From positions 186,001 to 250,000 of the IMG/VR virus record IMGVR_UViG_3300020473_000011: DNA of 64,000 nt; one strand, given 5' to 3'. This document shows positions 12,756-53,600 of the stretch, piece after piece. The position numbers and the translations under genes are program-made. The notes beneath the pieces were generated by a model. It saw only the letters and a list, made by a program, of their open reading frames with translations, was not told the origin of the DNA and did not search any database. The stretch's first letter is position 1; each line of letters opens with the position of its first letter.

Positions 12756-12847
12756 TGGTAGTGAGCTAGGGATTCGAACCCTAGGTACGCTATTAACGTA
12801 CGACGGTTTTCAAGACCGTTGCCTTAAACCAGCTCAGCCAGCTCACT
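12756..12847 (-). tRNA. tRNA-Ser(UGA)
   Basis: Cloverleaf AGTGAGC...ACGGT-CTTGAAA-ACCGT, long variable arm, GGTTCGAATCC, encoded CCA. Confidence 0.95.
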
Positions 12848-12879
12848 AAAAGTCTATAGAAATCAATTAAAAACTATGT

Positions 12880-12966
12880 TGGTACAGACGGAGAGACTTG
12901 AACTCTCACACCCTCACGGGTATCGGAACCTAAATCCGACGCGTCTACCAATTCCGCCACGTCTGC
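12880..12966 (-). tRNA. tRNA-Leu(UAG)
   Basis: GCAGACG...TCGGA-TTTAGGT-TCCGA, long variable arm, encoded CCA. Confidence 0.95.
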
Positions 12967-13159
12967 ATCATAGTTCTAACAAGGTTACTAACGTCACCGT
13001 ATCTGGGTAAGTCTTCTGCCTTGTCTCAATCAGGACGCCTATAGTAGTTTAGCGGGGCTACGTTGTACAGCACTTTTTGAAAATATTTATAAAAAACTTT
13101 AAGCAGCCCGATGATTGTACAATAAATTTAATGAGTTCGCACATGTGCACTTTTTTTAG

Positions 13160-13188
13160 TTGACTTGTGCACGGGTGTGCACTAAGCT
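13160..13188 (+). promoter_or_regulatory. Sigma70-type promoter with operator-like GTGCAC repeats
   Basis: TTGACT, 17-bp spacer TGTGCACGGGTGTGCAC, TAAGCT; a third TGTGCAC at 13144-13150. Confidence 0.7.
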
Positions 13189-13218
13189 GACGCTAATTAC
13201 TATTACAAGGAAAAATTC

Positions 13219-13902
13219 ATGATCATCGACCCAAACAGTCAACTAGCTGCTGATATGCGTAAAGCCCTAAAAGGCCATGACCTTGAGTCTGTCATTAGTA
13301 CGCTAGAAGGTCTTACAGTCGACTCTACGACCGAGCTATCAGGTCGAGAACTGGCAGCCCTTCGCATGCACCTTCAAATATCAGTGCCACAGGCCATTGA
13401 GTACATTGACGAAGTTAAGTCTAAGCGTGCGTGGTATTACTATGAGGAAGGCCGTAACCCTGTCCCAAAAGAGATTGCGAGCAAGATGCTCTTCCTTCTT
13501 AACATGCGACAAGCAACCTTCACCTCTTTTGTTAAGGGTGATTACGAGGTTGGCCAGTTCTCAAACTTTGATCAGTTTAAGAATGAGATCGAGTCCGCAA
13601 CTGAAATTCGATGGGCGCTCCATCAATCGGCAGAGGCTGAGTTCGTTGCAAAATCACTTAATAACGAAGTTGTTGCGACTGTCTCTGCGCCATGCTGTGC
13701 GACAGCGCTTTACCATGACGGACGTAACAACTTCCAGACAAATTATACGGGTGGTTCAGTAGGCAAGCTTAAAGCACGCTTTGTTGAGGAAATGAAACAG
13801 CGTAAGGCCGTTTGGGGCACACTGCACCGCGAGTCAGACGGGGCATTGATTGACACATACAAGCGTGAGGATGATGCCTGCGAGGTTAGTGGCAATGAGT
13901 AG
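13219..13902 (+). CDS. Aca2/DUF1870-like HTH regulator with N- and C-terminal extensions
   Basis: ELAALRMHLQISVPQAIEYI...RAWYYYEEGRNPVPKEIA...MRQ and F..F......IRWALHQSAEAE resemble the Aca2/YdiL pattern. Confidence 0.7.
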   Translation: MIIDPNSQLAADMRKALKGHDLESVISTLEGLTVDSTTELSGRELAALRMHLQISVPQAIEYIDEVKSKRAWYYYEEGRNPVPKEIASKMLFLLNMRQATFTSFVKGDYEVGQFSNFDQFKNEIESATEIRWALHQSAEAEFVAKSLNNEVVATVSAPCCATALYHDGRNNFQTNYTGGSVGKLKARFVEEMKQRKAVWGTLHRESDGALIDTYKREDDACEVSGNE

Positions 13903-14194
13903 TAAGGGTTGGCTTTACGGTGAGCCTATGAATGGTCGAGCTTTCCAACACAGCGCTAATGGTTTCGACTTCTTTAGCGAGCGATGTGACTTTAAGGACG
14001 GGCTTTACGTCGTCAAACCCGATACCTACGAGACCAGTGAGTCTGACCTCATCGCAGCAACCGCGCACGTTGTTGGGTACCATGCCTGCAACGTGCGACC
14101 TGAGCTTAACGGCTTTGCAGGCTATGATGCGATTACCTTTAAGGTTGTCTCAGCCGCAGAAGCTGGGGCGTTGAAGGCGAGCTTTGGTTTGTGA
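13895..14194 (+). CDS. Small hypothetical protein coupled to the Aca2-like gene (99 aa)
   Basis: ATG at 13895 overlaps the upstream stop; GAGGT RBS; terminator follows. Confidence 0.75.
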   Translation: MSSKGWLYGEPMNGRAFQHSANGFDFFSERCDFKDGLYVVKPDTYETSESDLIAATAHVVGYHACNVRPELNGFAGYDAITFKVVSAAEAGALKASFGL

Positions 14195-14218
14195 ATGTAG
14201 CAGACTATCCCACTTAAC

Positions 14219-14252
14219 AAAAAGCCCTGTCATTTGACGGGGCTTTCTTTTT
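14219..14252. terminator. Bidirectional rho-independent terminator
   Basis: AAAAGCCCTGTCA-TTT-GACGGGGCTTTCTTTTT between convergent genes. Confidence 0.8.
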
Positions 14253-14617
14253 TAGCGGCTTAGGCGCTTAGCTAGTGCTTGGCCAATAGGGCTGTTCTTA
14301 TCGAGGTCAGCTGCTGTGCCTTCTAGCTGTGATAAACGCAGGCGACTAACAATGTAAGAGCCTACCGTGTGCGAGTCGCGTTCATACGCGAAACGTAGAA
14401 TATCTTTGTCATTGCAACGTAAGTCACTAAACAACGTGCGAACCTTATTCGACGACTCAAAGAGAGCAGCGCGGAAACGTTTCTTATCGTCGTTCGCAAC
14501 CGCTTGGCAAAGTCTTTGCCCTAATGCTTCGGTTGTTACGGCCTTGGCGGGGTTCACGATTGATGACATCGCAAAAAGAATAGTTATTGCAGCGATTGCA
14601 GCTATCAGGTACTTCAA
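14252..14617 (-). CDS. DUF3718-like secreted/periplasmic protein
   Basis: Signal peptide, then LCQAVANDDKKRFRAAL...LRCNDKDILRFA (two conserved Cys). Confidence 0.7.
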   Translation of the reverse strand: MKYLIAAIAAITILFAMSSIVNPAKAVTTEALGQRLCQAVANDDKKRFRAALFESSNKVRTLFSDLRCNDKDILRFAYERDSHTVGSYIVSRLRLSQLEGTAADLDKNSPIGQALAKRLSR

Positions 14618-14666
14618 AGTAGCTCCTTGTGTCAGTTGTGTAAGTAATCAGCACAGCTAAAGGGAG

Positions 14667-14756
14667 TGGTAGCGAGCTTGGGATTCGAACCCAAGAAGGA
14701 CTTTCGCCCTTACACCCTTAGCAGGGGTGCGCCTTCGACCACTCGGCCAGCTCGCT
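14667..14756 (-). tRNA. tRNA-Ser(GCU)
   Basis: AGCGAGC...ACCCC-TGCTAA-GGGT anticodon arm, long variable arm, encoded CCA. Confidence 0.95.
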
Positions 14757-14875
14757 ATAATGGGGTTTTCGATAGAAAAGAAGGCTATAGCGTAAAAAGT
14801 GTTCCCACTCAACAGAGGCTATAGCGCTGTTATTTTAGTTTCGCACTTACGGTAGCGACTCTCCGTTTTTTTGTA

Positions 14876-14950
14876 TGGTACTCCCTAGGGGATTCGAACC
14901 CCTGTTTCCGCCGTGAAAGGGCGGGATCCTGACCGCTAGATGAAGGGAGC
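14876..14950 (-). tRNA. tRNA-Glu(UUC)
   Basis: GCTCCCT...CCGCC-CTTTCAC-GGCGG...GGTTCGAATCC, encoded CCA. Confidence 0.95.
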
Positions 14951-14958
14951 GTCAATAC

Positions 14959-15034
<76 letters not shown>

Positions 15035-15042
15035 ATACAATA

Positions 15043-15119
15043 TGGTTGCGAGAGACGGATTTGAACCATCGACCTTGTGGTTATGAGCCACACGAGCTGC
15101 CAGACTGCTCTATCTCGCA
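15043..15119 (-). tRNA. tRNA-Met(CAU), initiator-like scaffold
   Basis: TGCGAGA TAGAGCAGTCTGGCAGCTCG TGTGG-CTCATAA-CCACA...CGCAACCA. Confidence 0.93.
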
Positions 15120-15150
15120 TAAATTCTTTTCGTTACTACTTTGAAAGTAG

Positions 15151-15226
15151 TGGTGGAGCTAGGCGGGTTCGAACCGCCGACCTCTTGCGTGCAAGGCAAG
15201 CGCTCTCCCAACTGAGCTACAGCCCC
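15151..15226 (-). tRNA. tRNA-Ala(UGC)
   Basis: GGGGCTG with G3.U70; CTTGC-CTTGCAC-GCAAG; encoded CCA. Confidence 0.95.
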
Positions 15227-15402
15227 AAGCTTAACCCTTGGTGTCTGACAAGTGTACGGTTCAATACGTTACACTGCCACCTAGAGATAAGTAAGCCAAG
15301 CTGAGAGGCTTGGCTTAAACAGTACGGGAGATTATATAGAAAAGGGAAAGCGTTGTACAACCCTTTCCCTTAAAAATATTTAAACTTTTTCAAAAAGTTC
15401 AG

Positions 15403-15759
15403 TTATGTTTTTGGGGTAACCCAAACGAACGCGTTCTTTTTATCGCGCTGGTTCTTCTTTCGGTCAAGCACATCTTGGTAGAAGATTGATTGACGCCACT
15501 TGTTCGCTGAGCGCGTGATCCACATAATGATGTCATGAACTTTGACATTACCACGCGGGGCACGTAGTCCTGTTACCTTAGTCAGGTCTTTTACTGACAA
15601 GTTCCAGAACTCTGCTTCGCGGGGTAGCTGCCCCGCGACTAGACGTTGTGTAAGCTCATCGCGCTCGTTAACATCTTGCGTTGACTCAACTAACTGCTCT
15701 ACAGTCTGGCTAGTGTCGTATTCTTCAAAGCGTGCAAGGATTTGGTCTGCGCGTGTCAT
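15403..15759 (-). CDS. Hypothetical protein with shared N-terminal leader (MTRADQILARFEE)
   Basis: Start moved to ATG 15759 (AAGGTG RBS); basic C-terminus. Confidence 0.75.
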   Translation of the reverse strand: MTRADQILARFEEYDTSQTVEQLVESTQDVNERDELTQRLVAGQLPREAEFWNLSVKDLTKVTGLRAPRGNVKVHDIIMWITRSANKWRQSIFYQDVLDRKKNQRDKKNAFVWVTPKT

Positions 15760-15769
15760 ACGAGTCACC

Positions 15770-16603
15770 TTAAAATTCAAATTTCCAGTTAGCTACTAGG
15801 TTCTTGCGGTCTTTAGCTGGGATTGCATTAACGACCTTCGCTAAGTCAGCATCTAGTGCGACAGGCTCAATGTCAGTAACCATTTTCTTTGTGATTGCAT
15901 CGGTAGCATTTACAGCAACACGAAGGCGCGTAAAGGCTTCGGTGACGCCATCAGAGTTAGCCTGAATCTTCTCTAGTTCCATTAAGGCCACAAGCACCCA
16001 GTCTGGACGTCTACGCTTAATAGCTGTTGCAACACCTGCCACGTTGTGGTCGTTCGCGCCTTCGAAGTAGTCGACTAGTTCGTCAATCGCGACGGGTTCA
16101 TGCTTTCCGATGTCCATTGTATCGGCTAGCGCTTTCGCACCCTTTTTGTAACCGTTGGCTTTGGCCATTGTATGGAGTAAAAGCAGTGCTGCCTCATAGC
16201 TGTCGTCGGCGTCGTGGTCTAGTGCGCCTTCCGCAACATCAACACGAGATTCTACAACATCAATAGCATCACCCGACTGCTTTTCATCGGCGGCTTCGTC
16301 TAAGCCATCCTGTAGGTCTGCGATTTGAGCTTCAATGCCACGTAGGCTCTTAACTGCTTTTTCGAGGTCTTCTAGACTGTCGAAGAATCGGATCTGACCC
16401 ATGGTAGCCATGTTCTTACGCTTAGACCAAACTTCCCAGTCACCCTGTTTATTTTGGTGAATAGTGTATTGGGTCTGACGCACTGATGTCTGGTAGTAGG
16501 TGTGGTTACCTTCGGTAGATACTTCGATTTTAAGAAGTGCTGCTTCGTTTGAAGCTACAAGGGATTCGTCATGACGTGTGATTAATTGTCCAGCTCGGCT
16601 CAT
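15770..16603 (-). CDS. Hypothetical protein with shared N-terminal leader (MSRAGQLITRHDE)
   Basis: 277 aa; two apparent domains joined by an acidic linker. Confidence 0.8.
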   Translation of the reverse strand: MSRAGQLITRHDESLVASNEAALLKIEVSTEGNHTYYQTSVRQTQYTIHQNKQGDWEVWSKRKNMATMGQIRFFDSLEDLEKAVKSLRGIEAQIADLQDGLDEAADEKQSGDAIDVVESRVDVAEGALDHDADDSYEAALLLLHTMAKANGYKKGAKALADTMDIGKHEPVAIDELVDYFEGANDHNVAGVATAIKRRRPDWVLVALMELEKIQANSDGVTEAFTRLRVAVNATDAITKKMVTDIEPVALDADLAKVVNAIPAKDRKNLVANWKFEF

Positions 16604-16691
16604 CTTTGTCTCAGTCTTGGTTATTTTAGAAGCTCACTAGCCTAGCTTCTAAAAGACTAAGCCAGTCCTTTTAATCTTTTTATGCTTATAG

Positions 16692-16768
16692 TGGCGAGGA
16701 TGATGGGACTCGAACCCACGACCTCTTGCGTGACAGGCAAGTATTCTAACCAACTGAACTACATCCCC
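16692..16768 (-). tRNA. tRNA-Asp(GUC)
   Basis: GGGGATG...CTTGC-CTGTCAC-GCAAG, G73, encoded CCA. Confidence 0.95.
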
Positions 16769-18083: not shown

Positions 18084-21000
18084 CTAATCAAAAAGAATTG
18101 AGTTCATGATTGCAATACCCGTGTCGTCCACATTGAACGAACCAGCATGCCCCGAACTAGATGGACGTGGCGAACTTACTGTTGTGCGGCGCTGGGCTTT
18201 TGGCCTTGACGCCGACACCACATTCGGGTTATTACGATCAGGTCGCTTACCTTGTCCACCTGTAGCTGCACCCGATAGCTGTGCTTGTACAGTTGGCGAC
18301 ATAAGCGTGTCATTCATCAATTTCTCATCGCGCAGTGTTGGTGGCATTTCAACGTGGGCATTAAGCTGGCCACCTGCCGTAGCAACTGTGGCTGCTCCTG
18401 CAAGTGTCCCGCCCATTGCGGTATTACCTTGGCTAAGCAGTGAGCCTATCGCACCTGTACTAAACGCACGGCTTGAAACATTGCTCTTGGACGATGTTGA
18501 CCCACCGATGTTAGTAAGGTTGCTATAACTCGCAAGGTTAGACACCTTCGACACACTTGACCCATCATTACTCAAGCCAAACGTTTTATTTATCACATTC
18601 CGTGCGTTTTGAAGATGTGCATCTAGTTGACTATCACCTGTACTTCTATTCGACAAGTCAGGCGCTCGCCCAACGATAGTTGCTGCCGAAGACAAGCCGC
18701 CTTTTGCAGTGTAACCATCACCCATAAATAGCTGGTCGGCACTACCGCCTTCGGCTAACGATGGGTTAAAGAACGTGCCATCTTTTGATGCGATACTTGA
18801 TGAGCTTGGTTTGCTCTCTGAGCCGAACATGCTCGACCACGCATTATATGCCAGACCCATTGGCGTATAAGACGCTGCCGTACCAATCGCACCACCTACA
18901 CGGCTTAGCAGTGAAGGGGAGTCAGCTGTCTTACCATGTAGGTTAATAGACCCTGTGTTGCCATCGCTAACAAGACTGCTAACGCCTTTGTAAGCTAAGC
19001 CCATCGGCGTGTAAGACACCGCTGTGCTTGCCGCATCTTTTAAGCGGTCAAACATGGATGGTGACTCGCTGACTTTGCCTGACGGTGTTGCAGCTGCTCC
19101 CGTATTACCGTCGCTTACTAGGCTGCTAACGCCTTTGTAAGCTAAGCCCATCGGTGTGTAAGACACAGCGGTGCTTGCCGCGTCTTTTAAGCGGTCGAAC
19201 ATTGATGATGGTTCGCTTGCTTTGCCTGACGGTGTTGCAGCCGCTCCCGTGCTGCCGTCGCTTACAAGGCTACTAACGCCTTTGTAAGCTAAGCCCATCG
19301 GTGTGTACGACACAGCGGTGCTTGCCGCATCTTTTAAGCGGTCAAACATTGATGGCGTCTTTTCTTCCTTGGCACTTAAAGGCACTGACCCCGACGCATC
19401 GCTACTGAATAGACTAGAAGCGCCTGTCGCTGCCATACCAATAGGTGTATACGACATAGCAGTACTTGCTGCGTCAGACATTCTGCTAAGTAATGACGGC
19501 TTTTCATCGTCATCGCTAGCACTCCCTAAGCCCAATAGACTTGAGACTCCTGATGCGGCTAACCCCAAGGGTGTATACGACGCTGCGGTTGATGCGATAC
19601 TCGATGCTTTGCTTAATAATGAACTAGACTCATTGTTTGAGCTTTTGCCAACGCTCGTCGCCAAGCTTTTCGCAGCTTGGCTCGCAATCGCACTAGATGA
19701 ACCTGTTTGTTTATTAACACGGTCTCGTGGCTTAAATAGGTCAAGTTCCTTACTATCGTCTTTCGCAAGACTAAGACCTGTCATTGCCGCAGTACCCGCC
19801 AGTGCACCTGATGTTGCTAAGCTTGGCAAGGCATCGTCTACTAACTCGTCAGCATTTGGCGCTAGTGCATCACTGCTAGTGCCTGCAATCTTGGCAGCGG
19901 CACTCTTAGCCTCTTCCTCATCGTCGTCGCCACCCCATAGACCAAAGGTCATACGGTTCATGAGCGAATTACCGACATCACCAAGCATACTGCCCGCCGA
20001 GTGTATTCCGCGAGAGACTGAGCCTTCATCTAACAAACCAAAAGAAAGCCCAGATACGATGCCACCTAATGCCGACGACATTTTCTGACCTGTTGTGGCC
20101 TCTTGACCTTCTTCTAATCCGAAGTTGCTGCCCGCATTGTTCCATCCATTGAAACCATCGTAAGCCGCCATCAGTGGGGCTAGTAATGGAACCTTACCAA
20201 GCACGCCTTTCGCTAGACTACCAGCGCCTTTTAGTAAACCACTCGCGCCACCTGCGACACTAGCAATGCCACCACCTACACCACCTAATAAGCCGCCAGC
20301 ACCTCCCAGTAGCCCAGCGCCTTTAGACGCAATATTACCTAGGAAGCCTTTACCTTTCGAAAGGGCACCGCCTACGCCGCCAGCACCTCCCAGTAACCCA
20401 GCGCCTTTAGACGCGATATTACCTAGGAAACCTTTCCCTTTCGAAAAGGCACCGCTAACAGCACCGCCTATTCGAGATCCTAGGCCACCTTTACGTCGGC
20501 CAGACCCTCGGCTACGGTCTCTATCTGACCCACCAAAGTCAAGGAAGTCACCCGCCATGTCAAGCAGACCACCGCCTTCACCGCCTGTCGCTAGGTTAAC
20601 CATGCCTGTAGCTGCACCACTAATCGCAGCCTTCGCTGTCGAAGCCATATTACCAAGGGCACTGCGTACGCGACCCCCACGTGTACCTCCACGGCGTCCA
20701 CGGCGACCGCTTTCTATGTCTTGATTGCCTACACGGTCACGTCGTCTGTTCTTTCGACCACCTAGGAAGTCATCAAACAGGTCACCCGCACCAAGTAGGT
20801 CACCGATACCACCGCCGCCACCGAGCAAGCCTCCAAGAAGGCTTTCATCGGGGAGTGCGCCCTCTACACGCTTCAAAGTCTTACGCATATCTTTGATCAG
20901 AATCATTTCCTGATCGATGACATCCATTTCCTCTTTGTTGAGCTTCAAGGTTGAGCCAACTAGCGCCTCGCCATCTTTACCAGCTAAAGGGTTTGTAGCC

Positions 21001-22988
21001 ACCTGCATCATAGGTGATAGCGTTTCAGCTTTCTTTGAGACGGCTGAGTTTCCATCACGCTTTGCTTGGCGCTGCTGTTTCTTACTTTGCTGTGGCGTAG
21101 GGTGTGCCATCAAGTCGTTTTTACGGTCTGTCTTACCGACTGCAATTGATGCCGTCGTTGAGCTTAGCTGACCTTTTACCTTACGCTGACTACCGATGCT
21201 CGTTCTACGCGTTTCTGCGGGGGCAGGTAATGCTAGTACGGGCGAAGTATTTCTACGAGACGTACGTGGCTGATCAGGCAGCGCCAGAGTACTTCCTGTA
21301 TTGTTGTAGTTAGCAATACTTTTAGAACCCGACACCGAACGACGGTTATCAGTGTTCGTGATATTCGTTACGTTGCTGTTGTTCGTTACGCTTTTCGCAG
21401 CGTTTGCAGCATCCTGTGCCGACTTTGCAGAATTGACTGCTATGGTCTCTAGAGCGTCTAGCGTCTTTTCTTGCGTACGGTCTTTCGGCGCAAACAAGTC
21501 TAATTCTGTTGTTTTCGATTGCCCTGCATTCAAGCCATCAATATGCGCTGTGGAAGTTACCTTACTTCCTGCACTTGGCAATCGTGGGACTTCGGTCTCG
21601 ACATCAGCGCTGTTTTGCTTGAAAGCGCCTAGAAGTCGGTCTTTTAATGGTGCGCGCTTTGGAGCAGGTAAGGCCAGTACTTCCTGTTTCTCTTCTTTCT
21701 GCTCAGCATGGCGCTGCTTTTTATCTTCAAGGTACTTGTCGACCTCTTCGGCTGCACCTTCAAAGCCAATTGACCCTAGTGCGGCAGAAACCACCTCACT
21801 GCGGATATGAGAAAATGCGCGTGAACCAAAATCGCGAAGCATCCCCTTTTCTTTTTCGTTAGGCTCATCCTCGAAGTCGGCATCAGGGCGCTGATCCCCC
21901 TTGCCATCTTTAGACGACGCCTTATTCGACGTGCCTAGCCGTGCGGCTTCTTCCTGCTTTTCTGCACGGCGCTCACCGCGCTCTTCTATAAAACTTGAGA
22001 CCTCTGCGGCAGCACCTTCAAATCCGACGGTACCTAGGACAGCACCTAGCGCTTCTTCACGAAGACCAGCAATGTCGCCTGTCATGATCTTAGTTAGGAA
22101 GCTTGTACCACCTTTTTCTGGGTCGTCTTTACCGAACTGCCCCTTAGAGTTCCGTTTTTGTTTAGAATTTGCCTTCTTCTCTTCGTTTTCCTTAGCTTTC
22201 TTTTCGCGGTCTTCTTTTGACTTTTCTTTTTCAGCCTCACGCAGATCAAAGTCACGCTGCTTGTTCTGCTCATCGTGTACTAAACGGTTATGTGTTAGCT
22301 GGTCTTGATTGACTGATAGAACCTCGTGAACACCTCGGCTTAGCGTACCATTCTCTGAGGCTGAACTGCGTAAAAGCTCTACGATGTTACCTAGCTGTTT
22401 TGTCTGGTGAACATTGATACGGGCTTCTTGCTCGGCGAGCTTACGAATAACCGCCATATCATCAGCATCGGCGGCCGTATGGTCACCCAGTGATGCAAGT
22501 TGCTTTAACAGGACTGCTTGTTGCTTTGTGCTGGTGGCATTTTCAATAGCTTGAAGATAACCGTCAGTTAAGTCACCAACCGTGATCGGTTTAGCTGCCT
22601 GTATGTCGGACAGCTGGCCAGCTAGTGTATTTAAGGCATTAGCGCTATCAGCCATTTCCTCTTTTGTTAGTGAGAGGCCATCGGCTAGCTTAGTAAGAGC
22701 AGGTGTTTGATTAAAAGCATTATCAGCAACGTCACCAACATCGTTACGTGCAAACGACATTGCGCGCAACTGTGCAACTAACTCGGCTAAGTCATCTGCA
22801 ATGCTATCACTTGCCATATTAGTCGTATTATTGGTAGCCGCTGTAGGTTGAGCCAAAGCAGCCAGCTGAGCTTCTAGGGTAGACGCCAGCGTGTCTGAAC
22901 TTGGAAGAGTTGATGACGGCTCTAGGTGGTCTCTGACCTTACCGTAGTCAGATAAGCGGTCAGCTGTTTTAGTAAAGCCAAGTGGCAT
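18084..22988 (-). CDS. Tape measure protein
   Basis: 1634 aa, Ala/Gly/Ser-rich with coiled-coil stretches; follows tube and chaperone genes; KVPLLAPLMAAYD...GGIVSGLSFGLLD segment. Confidence 0.8.
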   Translation of the reverse strand: MPLGFTKTADRLSDYGKVRDHLEPSSTLPSSDTLASTLEAQLAALAQPTAATNNTTNMASDSIADDLAELVAQLRAMSFARNDVGDVADNAFNQTPALTKLADGLSLTKEEMADSANALNTLAGQLSDIQAAKPITVGDLTDGYLQAIENATSTKQQAVLLKQLASLGDHTAADADDMAVIRKLAEQEARINVHQTKQLGNIVELLRSSASENGTLSRGVHEVLSVNQDQLTHNRLVHDEQNKQRDFDLREAEKEKSKEDREKKAKENEEKKANSKQKRNSKGQFGKDDPEKGGTSFLTKIMTGDIAGLREEALGAVLGTVGFEGAAAEVSSFIEERGERRAEKQEEAARLGTSNKASSKDGKGDQRPDADFEDEPNEKEKGMLRDFGSRAFSHIRSEVVSAALGSIGFEGAAEEVDKYLEDKKQRHAEQKEEKQEVLALPAPKRAPLKDRLLGAFKQNSADVETEVPRLPSAGSKVTSTAHIDGLNAGQSKTTELDLFAPKDRTQEKTLDALETIAVNSAKSAQDAANAAKSVTNNSNVTNITNTDNRRSVSGSKSIANYNNTGSTLALPDQPRTSRRNTSPVLALPAPAETRRTSIGSQRKVKGQLSSTTASIAVGKTDRKNDLMAHPTPQQSKKQQRQAKRDGNSAVSKKAETLSPMMQVATNPLAGKDGEALVGSTLKLNKEEMDVIDQEMILIKDMRKTLKRVEGALPDESLLGGLLGGGGGIGDLLGAGDLFDDFLGGRKNRRRDRVGNQDIESGRRGRRGGTRGGRVRSALGNMASTAKAAISGAATGMVNLATGGEGGGLLDMAGDFLDFGGSDRDRSRGSGRRKGGLGSRIGGAVSGAFSKGKGFLGNIASKGAGLLGGAGGVGGALSKGKGFLGNIASKGAGLLGGAGGLLGGVGGGIASVAGGASGLLKGAGSLAKGVLGKVPLLAPLMAAYDGFNGWNNAGSNFGLEEGQEATTGQKMSSALGGIVSGLSFGLLDEGSVSRGIHSAGSMLGDVGNSLMNRMTFGLWGGDDDEEEAKSAAAKIAGTSSDALAPNADELVDDALPSLATSGALAGTAAMTGLSLAKDDSKELDLFKPRDRVNKQTGSSSAIASQAAKSLATSVGKSSNNESSSLLSKASSIASTAASYTPLGLAASGVSSLLGLGSASDDDEKPSLLSRMSDAASTAMSYTPIGMAATGASSLFSSDASGSVPLSAKEEKTPSMFDRLKDAASTAVSYTPMGLAYKGVSSLVSDGSTGAAATPSGKASEPSSMFDRLKDAASTAVSYTPMGLAYKGVSSLVSDGNTGAAATPSGKVSESPSMFDRLKDAASTAVSYTPMGLAYKGVSSLVSDGNTGSINLHGKTADSPSLLSRVGGAIGTAASYTPMGLAYNAWSSMFGSESKPSSSSIASKDGTFFNPSLAEGGSADQLFMGDGYTAKGGLSSAATIVGRAPDLSNRSTGDSQLDAHLQNARNVINKTFGLSNDGSSVSKVSNLASYSNLTNIGGSTSSKSNVSSRAFSTGAIGSLLSQGNTAMGGTLAGAATVATAGGQLNAHVEMPPTLRDEKLMNDTLMSPTVQAQLSGAATGGQGKRPDRNNPNVVSASRPKAQRRTTVSSPRPSSSGHAGSFNVDDTGIAIMNSILFD
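18952..19352 (-). repeat. 147-bp (49-aa) tandem repeat inside the tape measure gene
   Basis: SMFDRLKDAASTAVSYTPMGLAYKGVSSLVSDG three times; three more degenerate SYTPxG units flank it. Confidence 0.9.
20292..20445 (-). repeat. 84-bp-period duplication inside the tape measure gene
   Basis: SKGKGFLGNIASKGAGLLGGAGG twice. Confidence 0.85.
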
Positions 22989-44608: not shown

Positions 44609-47600
44609 TTAGGCTAGGTTACCCCATATAACGTACCCGTATTCGGTATCTCCCAGCGTATAACGGCGATATAGCCAGCTACCGTCATCAGGGTCTCTGT
44701 ACAGGATAGGCTCAACCACACCGTTTCGTATTGCCTCGATCATAGCTGCACGTGGTGAGTAAGTTCCTCGTGCTGTTCCGTTTTGCACTTTCTCGATCAA
44801 CTCTTCACGGTACTTAGTACGCAAGTCACGTAACCACTGCATCAGGTCAATCTGAACGATACCTGCCTTATAGCGTCGGAAGTCCTCACTTCGGAACTTA
44901 ATAGGCAAGTTAACATCAACCCTGTCATGGAACGGCAATGGCTTCATAAGTGAGTAGTCGATGCTATCAAGCACAGTGGCCATATCAACAGCATACTCTA
45001 CAAACAGGTCATCAGACTTAGCCACGGCCGCTTGCTTATAGCGGTCAATAATATCGAACGTTGGAAGAATATTACCGACTAGCTTCGCGTAGTCAGCCGT
45101 GTCCATCGGCTTCATCATACGGTAGTGCATGTTCGCAACAGGGTCACTGAGCAGGTACTGCTCGTAAGCTTGGCCAACGGCATTCACCATATCTTGGTAA
45201 CTCGCGTACTTAGAGTGCAGCACGCCACCTGCTTCGGCACCTGTTGCCTGTGCGTACGCTTCATCAATACGCGCGTCACTCAAGCCCATTGCCTTCAATG
45301 AACTGTAGAGCGAAGCAAGACCTTGCTCGTACTGCTCGTACAGACGGTCTAAGCGTTTTGCACTCACAGACTCTTGGTCATACTCGTCGTACAACGCAGT
45401 GTCACCTAGGTTAGACTGATCGAACTTATTGTAGCTCTCCGTGTCGCCTAGCCCTGCTTGTGCTACATCGGCGAATAGCTCGCCTTGCCCTAGCTGATAC
45501 TGTTTCAGGCGCATGTAGTGTGCCTTTGACACCTCTTTTGCTTGTGCAAAGAACATATCAGCTTGTGTAACGCTTAACCCAGCTTGCAGTAGTGCATTGT
45601 AGATTTCAGGCGCAACCAAGTCAGACTGTACTAGCTTGTTGTAAATAGCGCTGTCGCTTTCCAGTGATTGCTTGTAGCTCTGGTATGAGTCTGTTGTCTC
45701 TGCCAGCGCTTGACGCATAGCATGGTAGAACTCCGTCATACTCTCAGGCTTTTGTGCATACCACTGATTACCAAACCAGTTCTCGCGCATGACCTTAACG
45801 ACCTCGTCGTGCTCTTTCTCAGACAAGGCGACCTTTTGTTGTTTGAAGTCCCAGTGGTCGATAGCCACTTCGGTCAAGTTTGCGACCCACTTCTGGTATA
45901 GCTGACTTTCGCTCGGCGCAGCAAGTCTCTCAAAATCAAGACTATCAGCCAGCTTTGTGATCGTCTTGCGTAGCACAATCTCAATCTTCTTCGCGATACT
46001 CGACACATTCTGTGGATTAATACGCTTCATATCTGTAATGCGTATATCCGACGATGATACCTTGTCCCGCAACCCGATTGGTCGGTCGTTCAACAGACTG
46101 TAGCCACGGCCATCACGTCGCATCGCTATCCAAAAGTCGGTCGACACTATATCGCGTATTGGTACATACGCCTTGTTGGCTGCATGACCCAGTGGCACAC
46201 CCACTGGGAGTGATAAGCTATAGGCCGTTGACGTTGGACGTACATGCGGTGTAAAGCGCTTTTTAATGTCCGTCTTTGTCGCCATTTCTGACGTCAGTGT
46301 TTGATAGAACTTAGTGTGTGTTGCGTAACGGCTTTCACTTAGCTGGTGGTAGCCCGTACCACTAAATACTTCGCTGTAGTTGTCCAGCTGTTCAAAATGG
46401 ATCGCGTTAGAGAATACGTCGAACGGTGACCACTTCGTGTAGGTCACATCAGCATTAACATACTCTGACTCTATGCGGATAAAATCTTTATTCACGTAGT
46501 CATGCGCTTGTGCATTACGCAAGCGTATTACATCGGTAATTTTCACGTCTGGACGCGTCCGTACATCTTGGTCATACCGACGGTTCACGTCGACAGCTGA
46601 GACCTCAAGCTGCACCGAGTGGATAATACGACTTAACGTATGTTGGTCGTAGCGCTGTGTCCATTTTGGTAAACGGTAGTTCTCCACAAATGTTCGGGTA
46701 GGGATGACCCAGCGGTCAGTCTCAACCGTAACAGGTATACGTTGACCCATCGCACTTTGTTTGTACAGTACGGATGAACCCACGCCTTTTATTTGGTCGA
46801 GCATCTTAACCCACGCACTACCTACAATGCTGATTGATGGCGCTGTCGGCATCATAACTTGATGGTAGCGTGCGCCCTGCATCATTGGTGCCGCATGCTG
46901 CTGAGGTTTGACCCATTGCTCACCCGTCATACGCACAGCTGTGCTGGTGGTCGGATTAACCTGCTTAGTCAGAATATCTTGTGACAAACTCAATGAGTCC
47001 GTTTTCTTCTTGATAAGCTCAAGCTCTTGGGTTCCCATTATCTGGTCTGTACTTGCACGGTACGGCGACTGTATATGACTGCGCCCTAAGCTCTGCGAGA
47101 TATGACCGTAGTCTTGCAACCAGTTCGGCAGCCCATAAGGGAACGTATGGCGGAATTTAGGGAACCAGTACTCAGCCTTTTGAGACAGCGTACTTCTAAA
47201 GCCCGTCAGTGAATCGAACTTAACTTCTTGTAGGTTAAGACTCGCCTTAGCAACTTTCATTTCAATACTTTTCAGACGCATAGAGTCTGCTTGCGACCAC
47301 GGGGTCAGCTCTATTCGCTGAGTTACATAGCGCGTCAGTGCCTTTCGGCCATTGATGAGCTGTAGTGACCCCGATACATGGAAATCACTCTTAGTCATCG
47401 TCAGTGCAAACGGCTGGAACTTCGACATGTATGTCGTGCTCATGAATTTACCGTCACGTGGCTTATAACCCTTCACGGTCTTAACGCGCATGTGTCGCCC
47501 AAGTGCATCAGTCACACTCGGGATCTTCATGTGCTTGTAATGCTCCGTCGTTGCTTTCTCCATCTGAGCACCTGCCATCGCTAAGTGGAAGTCCGTTGCT

Positions 47601-50600
47601 TTTGCAAGGTCAACCGCTGCAAACTTTGGATTAAACCCACGCAGTACTTCAAGTGCTACATCAGTCAGGACAGGATTCTCGGCATAGCCTTCCTTCACGG
47701 CCATCGTTTCGTGCAAGTTGATCAGGGGCTGCATTACTTTTGAGTGTGCGTCGGCTAAGCGTATCGTCGTTCCAAACACTTCACTTGTCGTGTCAATTTT
47801 TGGCACGTTGTCCATCGTGATCTTAATCAATTCGACGGCAGTCTCCATCGTGTTGATTTGCAGCTTAGTGCCCGTAACATCAGCTAAATACTTAGCCCAG
47901 CGCATAACAACCGACTCGACATGCTTCATTGCAAGGCTGTGCGGTTCCATCACAAGCATAGCAACGTCGTTCATGATGGCATTGTATGAGGTTTCCGATT
48001 GCATTAGCACATCATTCATCGCCTTGATTTGACTACCTGCAATATTAAAGTTAGCCACTTCTGGTAACTGCTCTACAAAGTTGTCCATCAGCCTCATGTG
48101 AGTTGTTTGAAGTCCTGCTATCTCCATTGAAGACTCTTTACTCAGCGTCACCTTATTTTGCAGCGCACGTTGTGCAAGTCTATTTAGTAATACAGCCTGT
48201 TCAAGTATAGTAAGAGCATCTTGGTTTTGGTAGTTAACGCCAATTTCTTTCGTGAGCTGACGGTCGCGAACAAGCAGCAAGCGCTCGCCTAAGTGTGCTG
48301 CATAGCTCGTTAGGCTCGCCAGCGACACATTGTTTAGCTCTGTACGAATGTGACCACCACGCGTTAGTTTTGCACTGCCCTGTAGCTCAGTTGTTTTGAC
48401 TGTGCTTAACGGCAAACCATCCTCATAATGCGTCTGGCCACCTGCAACGCGTGTGTACAACAAGCCATCGGCCGTCGTGTCTTGTGACATTACGACGGTA
48501 GACGCGACGCCGTGCTCAATCGCTTGTCGTAGCGTCTGGTACTCGACAGTTGTCTCGACTAAATTTGACGCATAGTCAGTGCCTGCCACGACTGAGGCAT
48601 CGCTACTTAGGCGCGACGTACGCTGAACGGCCGAAGTTTCAATACGGTCTACCCAATAGCGCACCGATGGCTCTGACGTTAGTGTGACCGCCTTAACGTG
48701 TTTACGGTTAAGGTCATGACCTTGACGGTGATAGATGTCCTGCTGTGTGCTACTAAGTTTAGACGTAACCAGCTGTGTACCAACTTGCACATTAGTCCAT
48801 GATGCTTTCGTAAATGGCAGCTCTTCGCGGTGTGCTGATATTGAATCGGCCGTAACCAGCTTAATTAGCTCATCAATCGTAATACCGACTTTATCTAGCT
48901 TGAAGTTAACTAAGTCAGAGAGCACGCGGCTATTCTTGTCGACCTTAGTGAAGACACCTTTTGGTATGGCTTTCAGTTGGCTAAACGCCCAATCGACTAG
49001 ATTAGACTTTACAGCTTTAAGCCAGTCATTCGTATTGTAGGCGACTGCCTCAGCCTCAATATTGCTAACAGCATCGCGGCCAATCAGCACCGCATTTATC
49101 TGTGTTGAGGTATTTGATTTAGTCTCAAAATCAACACCATTCAATACACGCGTAATCCCTGAGTCTATGGCTAGTTGGGCACTGTCCATTAAAGTTGTGG
49201 ATGCGTGCAGGGCAGTGTCTAGTGTCTGTGTGTTCTTTGGCGAAATTGCTTGCGAGCGTATCAGTTTCACAAGGTCTTGGTAGTACGTTGACCCCGAAAT
49301 CACGTCCATACCCACAGGTTGTGGGAACATCGGCACGCCAGCTCTTTGAACATCAAAGTTACTTGCTGTTAGTGAATAGTTCTCGACCTCTATGATACGC
49401 AGGTCTACCTTGTTCTCTACGCGGGTGAATGGCTGTAGCGTGAACGCCTGACCCTTAACAAGTTCAGCACCTGTCTTAGCGCCACGCGCCACAAGCGTTG
49501 ACGACTTACTCGTGCCTAGGAAGCCCTGCACGCGCAGTGGTACCGTGCTAAAGCGGTTAATGGAAGTCTGCGCCATGTAGTATTCTAGAACGCTCTCAGC
49601 CTCACTACGGGCTTCGGTAAGGCGCAGAGGAACCACATTAAGTGACACCTTCGTTTCACCCATAGCAAAAGGTACTGCGTCCATAAAGCCACTACGGCTC
49701 TTTTCAACAGTGAACGTTAAGCGGTCAGTCCTTGTGCTCATACCACTGACTTTATGCAGTTGCAGCGTATTCTCTTTGGTTGACGCTTTGTGCTTCCCGA
49801 ATGGGATCAGGCGTGCTTCACTTGAGAACAGATAGCCCATCTTATTTAGGTCTATCGTTGTGGCGAACTTCTTAATCGTGTGGTTAACGTAACCTAGCCC
49901 TTTTGCTTGCGCTAAGGTTGAGCGGTGTACACGGCTGGGTATTTTTAACCCATCGCTATAATTCCACGCCGATCCTGATTGCATTTCAAAGGGTACAACC
50001 TGTGCTTGTGCTACACGATTGCCCGTGCCCACATCAAACGCTGCGCGCTGCCACTTGTAGGCTGCATCACGGAAAAGTCGCAGGGCGACTGTCGAGATAA
50101 AACCGCTTTGACTGTTCAGTGTAAAGGTGACATCGTCGTCAGCGACTGACGACCGAGCTAACGCATTGTATAACAGCTCAATTGTGCTTGAGAATGCGTT
50201 ACTCTCGCGTGCATCATAGCTTACCGTTTCAGGTAGACTGCTTGTAAGGTACGCTGCCGTTAAAAACTTGACTAGTTCCGCCGCAGGGACATCCTGATCG
50301 TCTCTAACGAGATTGATTATGTCTGTCCCAGCGGTGCTCAAGCGTGACATTAAGTAGCTCACGTCCTCGGCACTATCAGACGACAACAATGCCCGTGTGA
50401 AGCGTACTTTATCGACCCCCGAGTCAATTGACCAATTGCTCAGTACTTCGTAAAAAAGCTCAGCTACGTCACTTGTTCCTTTTGCTTGAGAAAAGACCAG
50501 CTTTTGTGCAGCTGGCATATTGCCGCCATTATCCAGACGGGTATTAATCCCCACCACATCATTTGAGGTGCCCACAGGCTTAGGCACTAGCGGATCAGTC

Positions 50601-53600
50601 GGTGCTGATGTTCGTGGTGCATTACGGCCATTCATAGGGTCGGCCGCCGCAGAGGTCGGAAACCCTCTGTTAGCCAGTATCGCATCGGCCATCGACGCTG
50701 TTGTGCTGCCTACTAAGTTGAAATTGAAGGATAGCGGGGCTTCCATCATGATGCGGTCAAGCGCATAACGTATAGCATACTTTAGCTCTTGTAATGCGTT
50801 TTGATTCGTCACTATATAGCGTAGTGTGTCGGCTATATGCGATTTAGTAGCACTTACCTTGAAGAGCTGAACCAAGTGGTTTGACGCATGAAGCGACAAG
50901 GCACTTGTTGGCGCATAGCCAAGTGCGTCGGGTGCCGTGAAAGTATAGAGCTGCACAGGGTACGCCAGCATAGGCTCCGCGTATTGCATGCCACGACCTG
51001 TCACCGTCATGTTAACGTGCTTAGCGTCTCTCATGCGGTTAGCCGTCACTTGTAGGGCACTCATCGGCGCGCCTACCTTTGAGGTTAGGTGGCTTAGCTC
51101 TGCCATGGTCAGCTTTGTCGAGGCAAATGCGCGGTTGCTTTCTACGTACGAAGCTAACCAGCGGTCTATTTTATCTTTCCCAGACCAGACACTACGTGTG
51201 GCATACGTACTATCAAAACCAGCTAGCGGTGCTTTAACACGCCATGATTTAATAACTTGTGAAAGTCCCAGTCTGTTCGTCTTAGTGAATGCCGAGCGTA
51301 GAGCCTCTAGCACGGTTTCCCCATGCGAAGAGGCTGACGAGGTGCCCTTTGTATCACCTTGAAAGTCTGAACTACGGTGGAGTGATGCAAGCACTGTGTC
51401 ATACCCCATCGCGATATGACGGCGAGCATGCGTGTAGTACTGCTGGTCGTAACCTAATACCTCTTTTCGCTGGTATTGGCCAGCCACAAAAAGGCCATCA
51501 AAGGCTTGAAAGGGTACCTGATAGCGAATACCCCTCATATCTTCGTCAGCAATAGAGATTGCACGCTTATCGCCTGTGAATAAAGCTGCTTGAGTCATGC
51601 TCTTTCGTGACGGGTAGGCCGCGCCGTATGACGCATTAGCACCCTCGTGGATAGACCTCGATACAAACGTAAAAGTCCATGTCTTGTAGGCAAGTCTACC
51701 CGCCAGCGTATTCAGTCCAATAAAGTACTGAACATCCGAATACGTCATCACGTTATGATAAGTACGTGATGCAATTGTTCGATTGGTTTCACCGTTAGAC
51801 AGTGCGCGACTGTAGTCAATATCTTGTGAAAAGCTGGTGCCTCGTTGCATTCCCTCAGAGTTAAGTAACTGGCGCTGAGCCGAGCGACTGTAGAGCATCA
51901 TCATGCGCATGAACGGATCAGCCGTTGCTGCTTGCGTACCATGTATACCTGTTTTTGTGCTGTAACCCGAACGTGAAGTAAATTGACGCGCTAGGTAGGC
52001 GTGAGCCGTGTTTGCCCAGTTCCGAATGCTTGTCTGCTGGATCTCAAACTTAAAGTTACCCACGGACAAGTCAACGTTCGACCTTAATAGCTTGTAGGAC
52101 GCATCCATCGTGCGCACTGTTACGGTACTACCCAAGGCGTAGTTATGTTTGTTCGCATGGTGTGCTGAACTACTTTGCATTACACGTGCTGAGTTATCAT
52201 TTGTTTCATGGGATGTCTGGTAAAGGCCAACCATTGCATTTGTGTTCGTACTCGCACGCGTAGACGGGGCGGAGATACCCACACGTTGAGGCTTAGCCTT
52301 GTAGTTGTCCCAAAAACCAGTCGTTAGCCTGACGTGGCGAACTTGGTCAACAGCGAAGCTTGGGATCTCAGGCGTCTTGTTCAAATCAGACGTCGACAGG
52401 TAGCATCGTATTTGATAACCCGTAAGTGTTCCATCTGCTGGTAACTGCTGTGGCTCGTTAGAGTATTCGGTGTACTTAGTTGTTAAAGACGATTGGTCAC
52501 GATACTGTAGGCGGAACTCCGTAAGTACCGAGGTGCCCGTCGGTATGACTGAATACAACGACGGTTCAACGCTCTGAATAACACGAAGAGACTCTACCTT
52601 AATGACATCAGATTCAAAGCTACCCACCCAGAAGCCACTCGCTTCCACAGGGTCTGATAGAAATAGGCGCTTTTGGCCATCGCTATCATACTGGAAGTCT
52701 GTGCCTTTCATTTCACCGTGAATGTCATCATGTAACGCTACTTCATCAACAGGCTCGTAGACTTCGACTCGGCTCCTGAAATGAAGGCCATCCATCACGT
52801 TGTACTGACGCTCAAGTCGCAATTCTTCATCAGTTACCCATGCAACCTGCGTGCTTGACTCCGTACCTTCGCTATCGGTAACAACCAATGTGCTGCCGTC
52901 ACTAACAACCAATAATGGGTCACCGTCATGCCCTAGTGAAAAAGATTGGCTCTCGTAGTGCTCGCCCACAAGGCAATCACTAACACTCGGTAGATTAAAA
53001 TAATCCGCCTTTTCTTCAAATAATATAACGGTCTCTGGTTGCTCACTATTAACTGCACCGTTAGTCTTCTCAATAGACTGGATGACCGTTGAGACCTCTG
53101 CACCATCAGGCTCGCTGATGGCGACCATCGTCACGACATAATTACCATGCCATGTGCTGTAGTAACCTTTGCGCTGCACGACGATTGGGTCTTCGTTTAG
53201 GGTCTCTGATTCTACGCTGTATAAATCAACAAGTAGCGAGCTGGCAAGGTCTAAGCAGTAAACTTCACCCGTAACCCGTGCCGAGAAAACAACTAAAGAA
53301 TTGTGAGCGTAAGCATGACCCACCTCGAAAGGAAGGGGCACCTCTTCAACGGTAAACTCGTCAAATGAAATAAAGTAAACAGCCGTCGTTGATACCGCAA
53401 CAATGCTACGAGAATAACCAAGCCACATTACGTGGTTTATATCGGCAACACCCTCTACGTAACGAAATGGCGCAAAGACAAGGCAGCCATCAGGATCTTG
53501 CTGTACATAGAATACATCAATATGATTGCGAGTATTTCCTACCACCCACAACAGGTCTTCTGCCCACACGACATCGGTTGCAGGGTCGGAGAGGGTGATC

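What the first reader, a model, noticed from the sequence alone, without database searches (positions are those of the whole stretch)
13895..14194. 99-aa orphan coupled to the Aca2-like gene: Acr candidate
Seen: start overlaps the regulator's stop; small, Asp/Glu- and aromatic-rich (FDFFSERCDFKDG...YETSESD), no recognised family, last gene before the terminator. Inference by association only.
Basis: inference. Interest (0 to 1): 0.6.

Follow-up and report, generated by a model that had tools for sequence, protein, structure and literature searches.

The report
Repressor-controlled small phage protein, unknown role
The 99-residue gene is real and sits in a self-repressed two-gene unit behind an Aca2-type regulator in a marine jumbo phage, but it belongs to a widespread, strongly conserved family of small phage proteins with an unmatched fold, and the evidence for an anti-CRISPR role is weak.

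Summary
A 99-aa ORF (13895-14194, +) starts 8 nt inside the stop of a 227-aa gene, whose residues 42-150 are a true Aca2/YdiL domain. It ends before a strong terminator and matches no Pfam, PHROG, NCBIfam or PADLOC model.

It is not an orphan. A profile search finds 217 representative clusters, almost all from uncultured phages, sharing the motif N..PF.H..G..F...RCDF...GYHA.NI.P.LNGF.GYD. The AF2 model is very confident (pLDDT 96.5) and has no clear match in PDB, BFVD or the ESM Atlas.

The link to the regulator is real but narrow. All six relatives of the extended regulator whose contig reaches the next gene carry a family member directly downstream, behind a conserved promoter with two GTGCAC-N4-GTGCAC operators. 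In 18 other independent loci, none of 66 neighbours is an Aca or Cro/C1-type HTH protein.

Reversed gene order, broad conservation, near-absence from bacterial genomes and no likeness to solved Acrs argue against a CRISPR-specific inhibitor (about 0.1).

Best reading: a dose-limited phage effector of unknown target under a dedicated autorepressor. The regulator's extra C-terminal domain has a Dmd-like fold, which is a lead only.

The parts
13135..13150 (+). Upstream operator-like site O2 (GTTCGCACATGTGCAC), a 2-mismatch copy of GTGCAC-N4-GTGCAC
   Evidence: An equivalent site lies 30-32 bp upstream of O1 in L030 and L032.
13160..13188 (+). Candidate sigma-70-type promoter: -35 TTGACT (13160-13165), 17-nt spacer, -10 TAAGCT (13183-13188)
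   Evidence: Read from the sequence. GTTGA and TA..CT are invariant in the alignment with L030, L032 and L033. The simple scanner did not call it because the -10 is weak.
13167..13182 (+). Operator O1 (GTGCACGGGTGTGCAC), filling the promoter spacer
   Evidence: It is the only match with at most 1 mismatch in the 281,557-bp phage record. It is kept with at most 1 mismatch at the same place in L030, L032 and L033.
13219..13902 (+). Regulator gene, 227 aa: N-terminal about 40 aa, Aca2/YdiL HTH plus dimerisation domain (42-150), extra C-terminal beta-beta-alpha-beta-beta domain (158-217)
13882..13885 (+). GAGG Shine-Dalgarno-like site, 9 nt before the ATG of the small gene and inside the regulator gene
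   Evidence: Sequence.
13895..14194 (+). The 99-aa gene. It belongs to an uncurated family of small phage proteins with a core of about 75 aa (residues 12-85), plus subfamily-specific N-terminal (W-L-Y-G-E-P) and C-terminal helix (L-K-x-x-F-G-L) extensions
   Evidence: AF2 model pLDDT 96.5.
14221..14256 (.). Intrinsic-terminator-like hairpin (11 pairs) with T-run. It lies between the module and the convergent gene 14252-14617
   Evidence: Similar hairpins follow the small gene in L030, L032 and L033.

Best explanation
The locus is a self-contained, self-repressed two-gene transcription unit. It sits on the opposite strand to the surrounding tail and tRNA genes of a marine jumbo phage.

The first product is an Aca2-family helix-turn-helix dimer with an added small C-terminal domain. 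It most likely binds two GTGCAC-N4-GTGCAC sites, one filling the -35/-10 spacer and one just upstream, and so shuts off its own promoter once it accumulates.

The second product is the 99-aa protein. It is made from the same mRNA by coupled translation, so its dose is capped by the repressor. It is the unit's cargo: a compact alpha/beta protein of a widespread phage family, probably acting as a dimer on a broadly conserved host or phage component. A part of the nucleic-acid or transcription machinery is the best guess.

Its role is therefore a dose-sensitive phage effector (host take-over or general counter-defence) rather than a CRISPR-specific inhibitor.

Shown: the gene, its family, the regulator's identity, operon anatomy and conservation of the pair.

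Inferred: operator binding, autorepression, dimerisation, target class and effector role.
For: - The regulator is Aca2-family.
- The perfect operator is unique in the 281-kb record and lies in the promoter spacer. Promoter and operators are conserved in L030, L032 and L033.
- Of the 7 relatives of the extended regulator, the 5 distinct pairs examined (window, L003, L030, L032, L033) and a duplicate of L030 (L031) have a family member directly downstream. The two proteins diverge in step: regulator 54-70% identity, small protein 57-90%.
- A terminator closes the unit.
- Metatranscriptome contigs identical to the window lie on the regulator gene and bridge the gene junction at 13847-14026.
- The family has 217 representative clusters, a near-invariant polar/aromatic motif and a very confident fold.
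- Members stand alone among small genes of large phages, near tRNA and nucleotide-metabolism genes.
- Fusions exist to an RNAP alpha-CTD domain and to CxxC-rich tails. Two members are tandem duplications, consistent with a dimer.
- Published work shows that Aca repressors exist to limit harmful over-expression of their cargo, and that many Aca-regulated genes are of unknown function (PMC13551039, PMC6765145).
Against: - No experiment or known homologue assigns any activity.
- The target class rests on a single alpha-CTD fusion and on sequence-pattern tails.
- Conserved D, H, R, C and N residues could equally mark an enzyme or metal site.
- The RNA evidence comes from assembled contigs of an RNA library, and DNA carry-over is not excluded.
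- The -10 element is weak and was not called by the scanner.
- The regulator model is only moderately confident (pLDDT 67.5).
Confidence: 0.45

Rival explanations
1. Anti-CRISPR proper: the 99-aa protein binds and blocks a host CRISPR-Cas effector, and the Aca2-like gene is its Aca.
For: - It is linked in one operon with a true Aca2-family gene.
- It is a small, mildly acidic phage protein with no known family.
- The unit is autorepressed, as in acr-aca loci (PMC6765145).
- Aca-regulated genes of unknown function are proposed anti-defence candidates (PMC13551039).
Against: - The order is aca-then-gene, whereas most acr genes lie upstream of aca (PMC8633003).
- None of 18 independent homologue loci has an aca or Cro/C1-type HTH neighbour, and no neighbour is conserved across them.
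- The cargo is fixed, not variable, across relatives of the regulator.
- The family spans 217 clusters from varied samples with near-invariant residues, unlike narrowly distributed, fast-changing Acrs.
- Only 3 hits appear in 185,579 species genomes and only 5 Vibrio phages among 50,697 phage records.
- There is no sequence or fold match to solved Acrs.
- The Aca2 5'UTR RNA motif is absent.
- Aca2-like regulators occur in non-Acr contexts (PMC8434428).
Confidence: 0.1
2. Regulator-partner or toxin-antitoxin-like pair: the 99-aa protein binds the regulator's extra C-terminal domain. It would act either as a growth-inhibiting protein neutralised by the regulator or as a co-repressor/anti-repressor that tunes the operon.
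For: - The anatomy is that of a type II TA operon. A DNA-binding protein with an added domain comes first, a gene of about 100 aa comes second with overlapping stop and start, and palindromic operators lie in the promoter.
- The extra C-terminal domain co-occurs with the small gene in every relative.
- Aca2's HTH resembles the antitoxin MqsA (PMC6765145, rows 8 and 11).
Against: - The family stands alone, without the regulator or any conserved partner, in 18 other loci.
- It shows no likeness to any known toxin.
- The Dmd likeness is fold-only. hhalign gives P 0.13, and the sequence alignment is out of register with the structural one.
Confidence: 0.2
3. Small enzyme or metal/nucleotide-binding protein serving phage tRNA or nucleotide metabolism, with the regulator merely adjacent.
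For: - Near-invariant polar residues (R30, D32, H63, Y77, D78, with H19 and C31 common) suggest a site rather than a surface.
- Family genes sit beside tRNA clusters, PTH2, GTP cyclohydrolase I, pseudouridine synthase, thymidylate synthase, NUDIX and nucleoside deoxyribosyltransferase genes.
Against: - A core of about 75 aa is very small for an enzyme.
- Such neighbourhoods are typical of accessory regions of large phages in general, and no neighbour is conserved.
Confidence: 0.15
4. Chance ORF or mis-called start, not a gene.
For: None beyond its small size.
Against: - Homologues reach E 1e-32 and share the start and length.
- The AF2 model has pLDDT 96.5.
- A Shine-Dalgarno-like site and a terminator are present.
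Confidence: 0.01

Closest known systems
acrIF8-aca2 operon of Pectobacterium phage ZF40 (Aca2, PF08965/DUF1870)
   Same: - Two similar inverted-repeat sites lie at the promoter.
- A small gene of unknown family sits in the same operon.
- The unit is closed by a terminator.
   Different: - The gene order is reversed.
- The operator is GTGCAC-N4-GTGCAC, not TTCG-N6/8-CGAA (PMC6765145).
- There is no structured 5'UTR motif.
- The regulator has an extra 40 N-terminal and about 75 C-terminal residues.
- The phage is a jumbo myovirus-type phage with a tRNA cluster, not a temperate phage.
- The cargo family is broad and mostly found without any aca.
SO3848 (PDB 2OX6) and YdiL (PDB 1S4K), Aca2-like proteins of unknown role
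   Same: - SO3848 also has a C-terminal extension and a non-Acr-looking neighbour (PMC8434428).
   Different: - They are chromosomal, not phage-borne.
- The SO3848 extension is helical, not beta-beta-alpha-beta-beta.
- They have no family member downstream.
Fused Acr-Aca proteins (AcrIF24, AcrIIA1)
   Different: No inhibitory activity is shown for the extra domain here, and there is no homology.
T4 Dmd, phage antitoxin against RnlA/LsoA
   Different: - There is no sequence support (hhalign P 0.13).
- The weak HMM alignment is about 12 residues out of register with the structural one.
- This concerns the neighbouring gene, not the 99-aa protein.
Gelsolin-like domains (best fold matches of the 99-aa protein)
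   Different: The score is below any meaningful level, and no sequence or functional link exists.

Membership tests
Anti-CRISPR (acr gene of an acr-aca operon) | Same operon as an aca gene | tested here: met
   Aca2_YdiL domain in the upstream gene, with an 8-nt overlap, one promoter and one terminator.
Anti-CRISPR (acr gene of an acr-aca operon) | acr lies upstream of aca (the usual order) | tested here: not met
   The small gene lies downstream of the regulator in the window and in all relatives. The usual order is given in PMC8633003.
Anti-CRISPR (acr gene of an acr-aca operon) | Homologues recur next to aca or known acr genes in unrelated elements | tested here: not met
   In 18 independent loci, 66 flanking genes include no Aca2 or Cro/C1-type HTH family, and no neighbour is conserved. 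Only the window's own lineage keeps the pair.
Anti-CRISPR (acr gene of an acr-aca operon) | Sequence or fold likeness to a characterised Acr | tested here: not met
   [not shown]
Anti-CRISPR (acr gene of an acr-aca operon) | Inhibits a CRISPR-Cas system | not testable with these tools
   Needs plaque or transformation assays. The host is unknown.
Aca2/YdiL regulators (for the upstream gene) | Pfam PF08965 above the gathering score, and the Aca2 fold | tested here: met
   [not shown]
Aca2/YdiL regulators (for the upstream gene) | Inverted repeats at its own promoter | tested here: met
   O1 lies in the spacer and O2 32 bp upstream. Both are conserved in relatives, and O1 is unique in the genome record. 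Binding itself was not tested.
Aca2/YdiL regulators (for the upstream gene) | [quoted passage not shown] | tested here: not met
   The UTR is about 25-30 nt. The fold z-score is +1.36 and there is no Rfam match.
Type II toxin-antitoxin module | DNA-binding antitoxin first, small toxin second, coupled, with operator in the promoter | tested here: met
Type II toxin-antitoxin module | The toxin family is always accompanied by a neutralising partner | tested here: not met
   The family stands alone in 18 loci.
Type II toxin-antitoxin module | The two proteins form a complex | tested here: inconclusive
   Complex prediction gave no verdict.
Dmd (for the regulator's C-terminal domain) | Dmd fold | tested here: inconclusive
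   [not shown]
Dmd (for the regulator's C-terminal domain) | Sequence homology to Dmd | tested here: not met
   HMM against PDB: E 0.64. hhalign against 7 Dmd sequences: P 0.13, probability 0.45%.

The most novel reading that the evidence does not exclude
The unit is a two-part counter-defence locus of a new kind. The first part is an Aca2 repressor fused to a Dmd-like toxin-neutralising domain. The second part is the first regulated member of a large, new-fold family of small phage proteins that disarm a widely conserved host function or defence. If so, hundreds of uncultured phages carry an unrecognised anti-defence or host-takeover family.
Probability: 0.2. Interest if true: 0.7.

Novelty: new variant of a known kind. 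Interest (0 to 1): 0.45.

Why it matters
Guilt-by-association with aca genes is the main way new anti-CRISPRs are found, and this case shows its limits. The regulator is a true Aca2 relative, yet the cargo's own family distribution argues against a CRISPR-specific role.

The work also defines three things:
- an uncurated, widespread family of small phage proteins with a confident and apparently unmatched fold;
- a new Aca2 architecture with an extra domain and a new operator sequence;
- a clean, compact regulatory unit that can be tested directly.

Five cultured Vibrio phages, including 1.063.O on Vibrio lentus, carry a family member, so the family is open to genetics.

Tried and rejected
- **Curated libraries.** Pfam, PHROGs, NCBIfam and PADLOC scans of the protein, and Pfam and PHROGs scans of 99 family members, found nothing.
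- **Word search.** The word-based protein search found only 2 relatives. The profile search was needed to see the family.
- **Fold searches of the 99-aa model.** There was no clear match in Foldseek PDB, VIA-align wide, BFVD or the Atlas. The Atlas feature search returned only unnamed clusters scoring under 0.9.
- **Collection scans.** IMG/VR with the close alignment gave no confirmed locus. A 15-sequence alignment gave 4 loci, a degenerate DNA pattern gave 3, and the genome collection gave 3.
- **Complex prediction.** Complex prediction of the regulator with the 99-aa protein gave no verdict (score 0.06), which counts neither for nor against binding.
- **Dmd homology of the regulator's C-terminal domain.** The top PDB sequence hit was Dmd, but at E 0.64. 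hhalign gave P 0.13, and the alignment is out of register with the structural one. It is rejected as sequence evidence and kept as a fold lead.
- **Aca2 operator and RNA motif.** The TTCG-N6-CGAA operator is not present. TTCG occurs at 13136, but its partner is TGCA (PMC6765145). No RNA motif or structure was found in the leader.
- **Composition.** The unit shows no foreign-DNA signal.
- **Raw RNA reads.** Run X24 laid nothing.
- **Residue mapping.** Model coordinates are not exposed, so conserved residues could not be mapped in 3D.

Full report
**What is there**

The window is part of a 281,557-bp IMG/VR virus record judged 67% complete. It is a jumbo phage with tail and baseplate genes on the minus strand. 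Eight minus-strand tRNA genes lie between 12756 and 16768.

Inside this region lies a short plus-strand unit.
- **Genes.** A 227-aa gene (13219-13902) is followed by the 99-aa gene of the finding (13895-14194).
- **Coupling.** The ATG of the second gene lies in ATGAGTAG and overlaps the first gene's TAG by 8 nt. GAGG lies 9 nt upstream.
- **Terminator.** An 11-pair hairpin with a T-run follows at 14221-14246. It is shared with a convergent DUF3718 gene at 14252-14617.
- **Composition.** It does not differ from the flanks.

**The regulator**

Residues 42-150 match Pfam Aca2_YdiL (E 4e-12, above the curated cut-off). They also match solved Aca2 chains (E 1e-8).

The protein is about twice the size of Aca2. 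It has roughly 40 extra N-terminal residues and a conserved C-terminal beta-beta-alpha-beta-beta domain at 158-217.

**Promoter and operators**

Upstream lies TTGACT (13160-13165), a 17-nt spacer and TAAGCT (13183-13188). The spacer is filled by GTGCACGGGTGTGCAC (13167-13182). A degenerate copy, GTTCGCACATGTGCAC, lies at 13135-13150.
- The perfect site is the only match, allowing one mismatch, in the whole 281-kb record.
- The same layout is kept in three diverged relatives.
- The site differs from the TTCG-N6/8-CGAA repeats of ZF40 Aca2 (PMC6765145).
- The leader is short and unstructured, with no Rfam match.

The simplest reading is a dedicated autorepressor. Binding itself is inferred, not shown.

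**The 99-aa protein is not an orphan**

No curated library matches it. The word-based search found only two relatives.

A profile of three sequences was scored against 1.84 billion representatives. It found 217 proteins at E<=1e-3 and 55 at E<=1e-10.
- The core of about 75 residues (12-85 here) carries N13, F17, H19, G23, F26, R30, C31, D32, then H63, I67, L71, N72, G73, F74, G76, Y77 and D78.
- D32, H63, F74, G76 and Y77 are present in 97-100% of 99 aligned sequences.
- The N-terminal W-L-Y-G-E-P and the C-terminal helix are specific to the closest subfamily.
- None of the 99 members matches Pfam or PHROGs, and sources call them 'hypothetical'.

The AF2 model is very confident (pLDDT 96.5, pTM 0.86). 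It has three strands, a long helix (49-70), a strand and a helix. Nothing clear matches it:
- Foldseek PDB gave no match with E<=0.001.
- BFVD and the ESM Atlas gave only weak rows.

**Who carries the family**

Almost all carriers are uncultured phages.
- Among 50,697 phage records, only five Vibrio phages have a member. There it lies in an array of small unnamed genes next to a divergent junction.
- Only three hits appear in one genome each of 185,579 species, all on MAG contigs.
- Many members lie on contigs of 50-950 kb.
- Neighbours include tRNAs and genes for PTH2, GTP cyclohydrolase I, thymidylate synthase, NUDIX, pseudouridine synthase and nucleoside deoxyribosyltransferase.
- One member is fused to an RNA polymerase alpha C-terminal domain (PF03118, E 3e-12). 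Several have CxxC-rich tails, and two are tandem duplications.

**The association test**

- **For the link.** The extended regulator has five relatives in the 5.8-billion-cluster set (54-65% identity), plus the partial copy in L003.
  - Every one whose contig reaches the next gene has a family member directly downstream (L003, L030, L031, L032, L033).
  - The two proteins diverge in step.
  - The pair is therefore a conserved module, and its cargo is fixed rather than variable.
- **Against the link.** In 18 other independent loci the family gene has no relative of the regulator nearby.
  - No neighbour is conserved across those loci.
  - Among 66 flanking genes there is no Aca2 or Cro/C1-type HTH family; the only DNA-binding match is one weak Fe_dep_repress hit.

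**Expression**

The stretch occurs in about 11 studies, mainly seawater metagenomes. In one marine metatranscriptome sample, contigs identical to the window lie on three stretches:
- the regulator gene (13340-13582);
- the gene junction (13847-14026);
- the DUF3718/tRNA-Ser region.

This fits co-transcription. However, these are assembled contigs of an RNA library, and DNA carry-over is not excluded.

**The regulator's extra domain**

A sequence profile of the domain also ranks Dmd first in the PDB, but only at E 0.64. Two checks weaken this:
- hhalign against seven Dmd sequences gives P 0.13.
- The weak sequence alignment (offset 168) is about 12 residues out of register with the structural one (offset 155-158), so the two do not corroborate each other.

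The Atlas shows similar small folds in 62-aa viral proteins and in DUF6894. I keep this as a lead. The regulator may be a fusion of an Aca2 module with a small protein-binding domain, as in AcrIF24 or AcrIIA1. Dmd inhibits the HEPN RNases RnlA and LsoA (PMC8266594).

**Weighing**

| Reading | Points for | Points against | Probability |
|---|---|---|---|
| CRISPR-specific Acr | The Aca2 link, small size, unknown family | Reversed order (PMC8633003), fixed cargo, breadth and conservation of the family, near-absence from prophages, no likeness to solved Acrs, documented non-Acr contexts of Aca2-like proteins (PMC8434428) | about 0.1 |
| Dose-limited effector under a dedicated autorepressor, target unknown (nucleic-acid or transcription machinery is the best guess) | See Best explanation | No activity shown | about 0.45 |
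| Partner of the regulator, or TA-like pair | Operon anatomy; extra domain co-occurs with the small gene | Family stands alone in 18 loci | about 0.2 |
| Small enzyme or ligand-binding protein | Near-invariant polar residues; tRNA and nucleotide-metabolism neighbours | Very small core; no enzyme fold match | about 0.15 |

The complex prediction gave no verdict. It is listed only among things tried.

**Constraints**

Noticed in passing
[not shown]
   Followed up: partly
window 12756-16768: Eight minus-strand tRNA genes (Ser-tga, Leu-tag, Ser-gct, Glu, Thr, Met, Ala, Asp) are interleaved with the plus-strand unit, inside a tail/baseplate gene region.
   Followed up: partly
window 14252-14617 (-): A DUF3718 protein (E 9e-14) with a signal-peptide-like N-terminus converges on the same terminator. 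A DUF3718 gene also follows the module in L030, with a weak relative in L003.
   Followed up: partly
P0017 (locus L029 755-1201): A family member is fused to an RNA polymerase alpha C-terminal domain (PF03118, E 3e-12). P0104 and P0108 are tandem duplications of the domain, and several members have CxxC...CxxC tails.
   Followed up: partly
window 18084-22988 (-) and 44609-53935 (-): Two very long ORFs of 1634 aa and 3108 aa. The first matches only a PHROG of unknown function, and the second was not examined.
   Followed up: no
L001 4120-5977: About 1.8 kb upstream of a stand-alone family gene holds one tRNA-Lys and no convincing ORF. It may contain decayed tRNA genes or other RNAs.
   Followed up: no
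window 12900-14700 in runs X18/X19: Marine metatranscriptome contigs identical to the window cover parts of the regulator gene, the gene junction, the DUF3718 gene and flanking tRNAs. The phage DNA also occurs in about 11 studies, mostly seawater.
   Followed up: partly
P0201: One JGI record names a family member 'methyl coenzyme M reductase subunit D', which looks like a mis-annotation.
   Followed up: no
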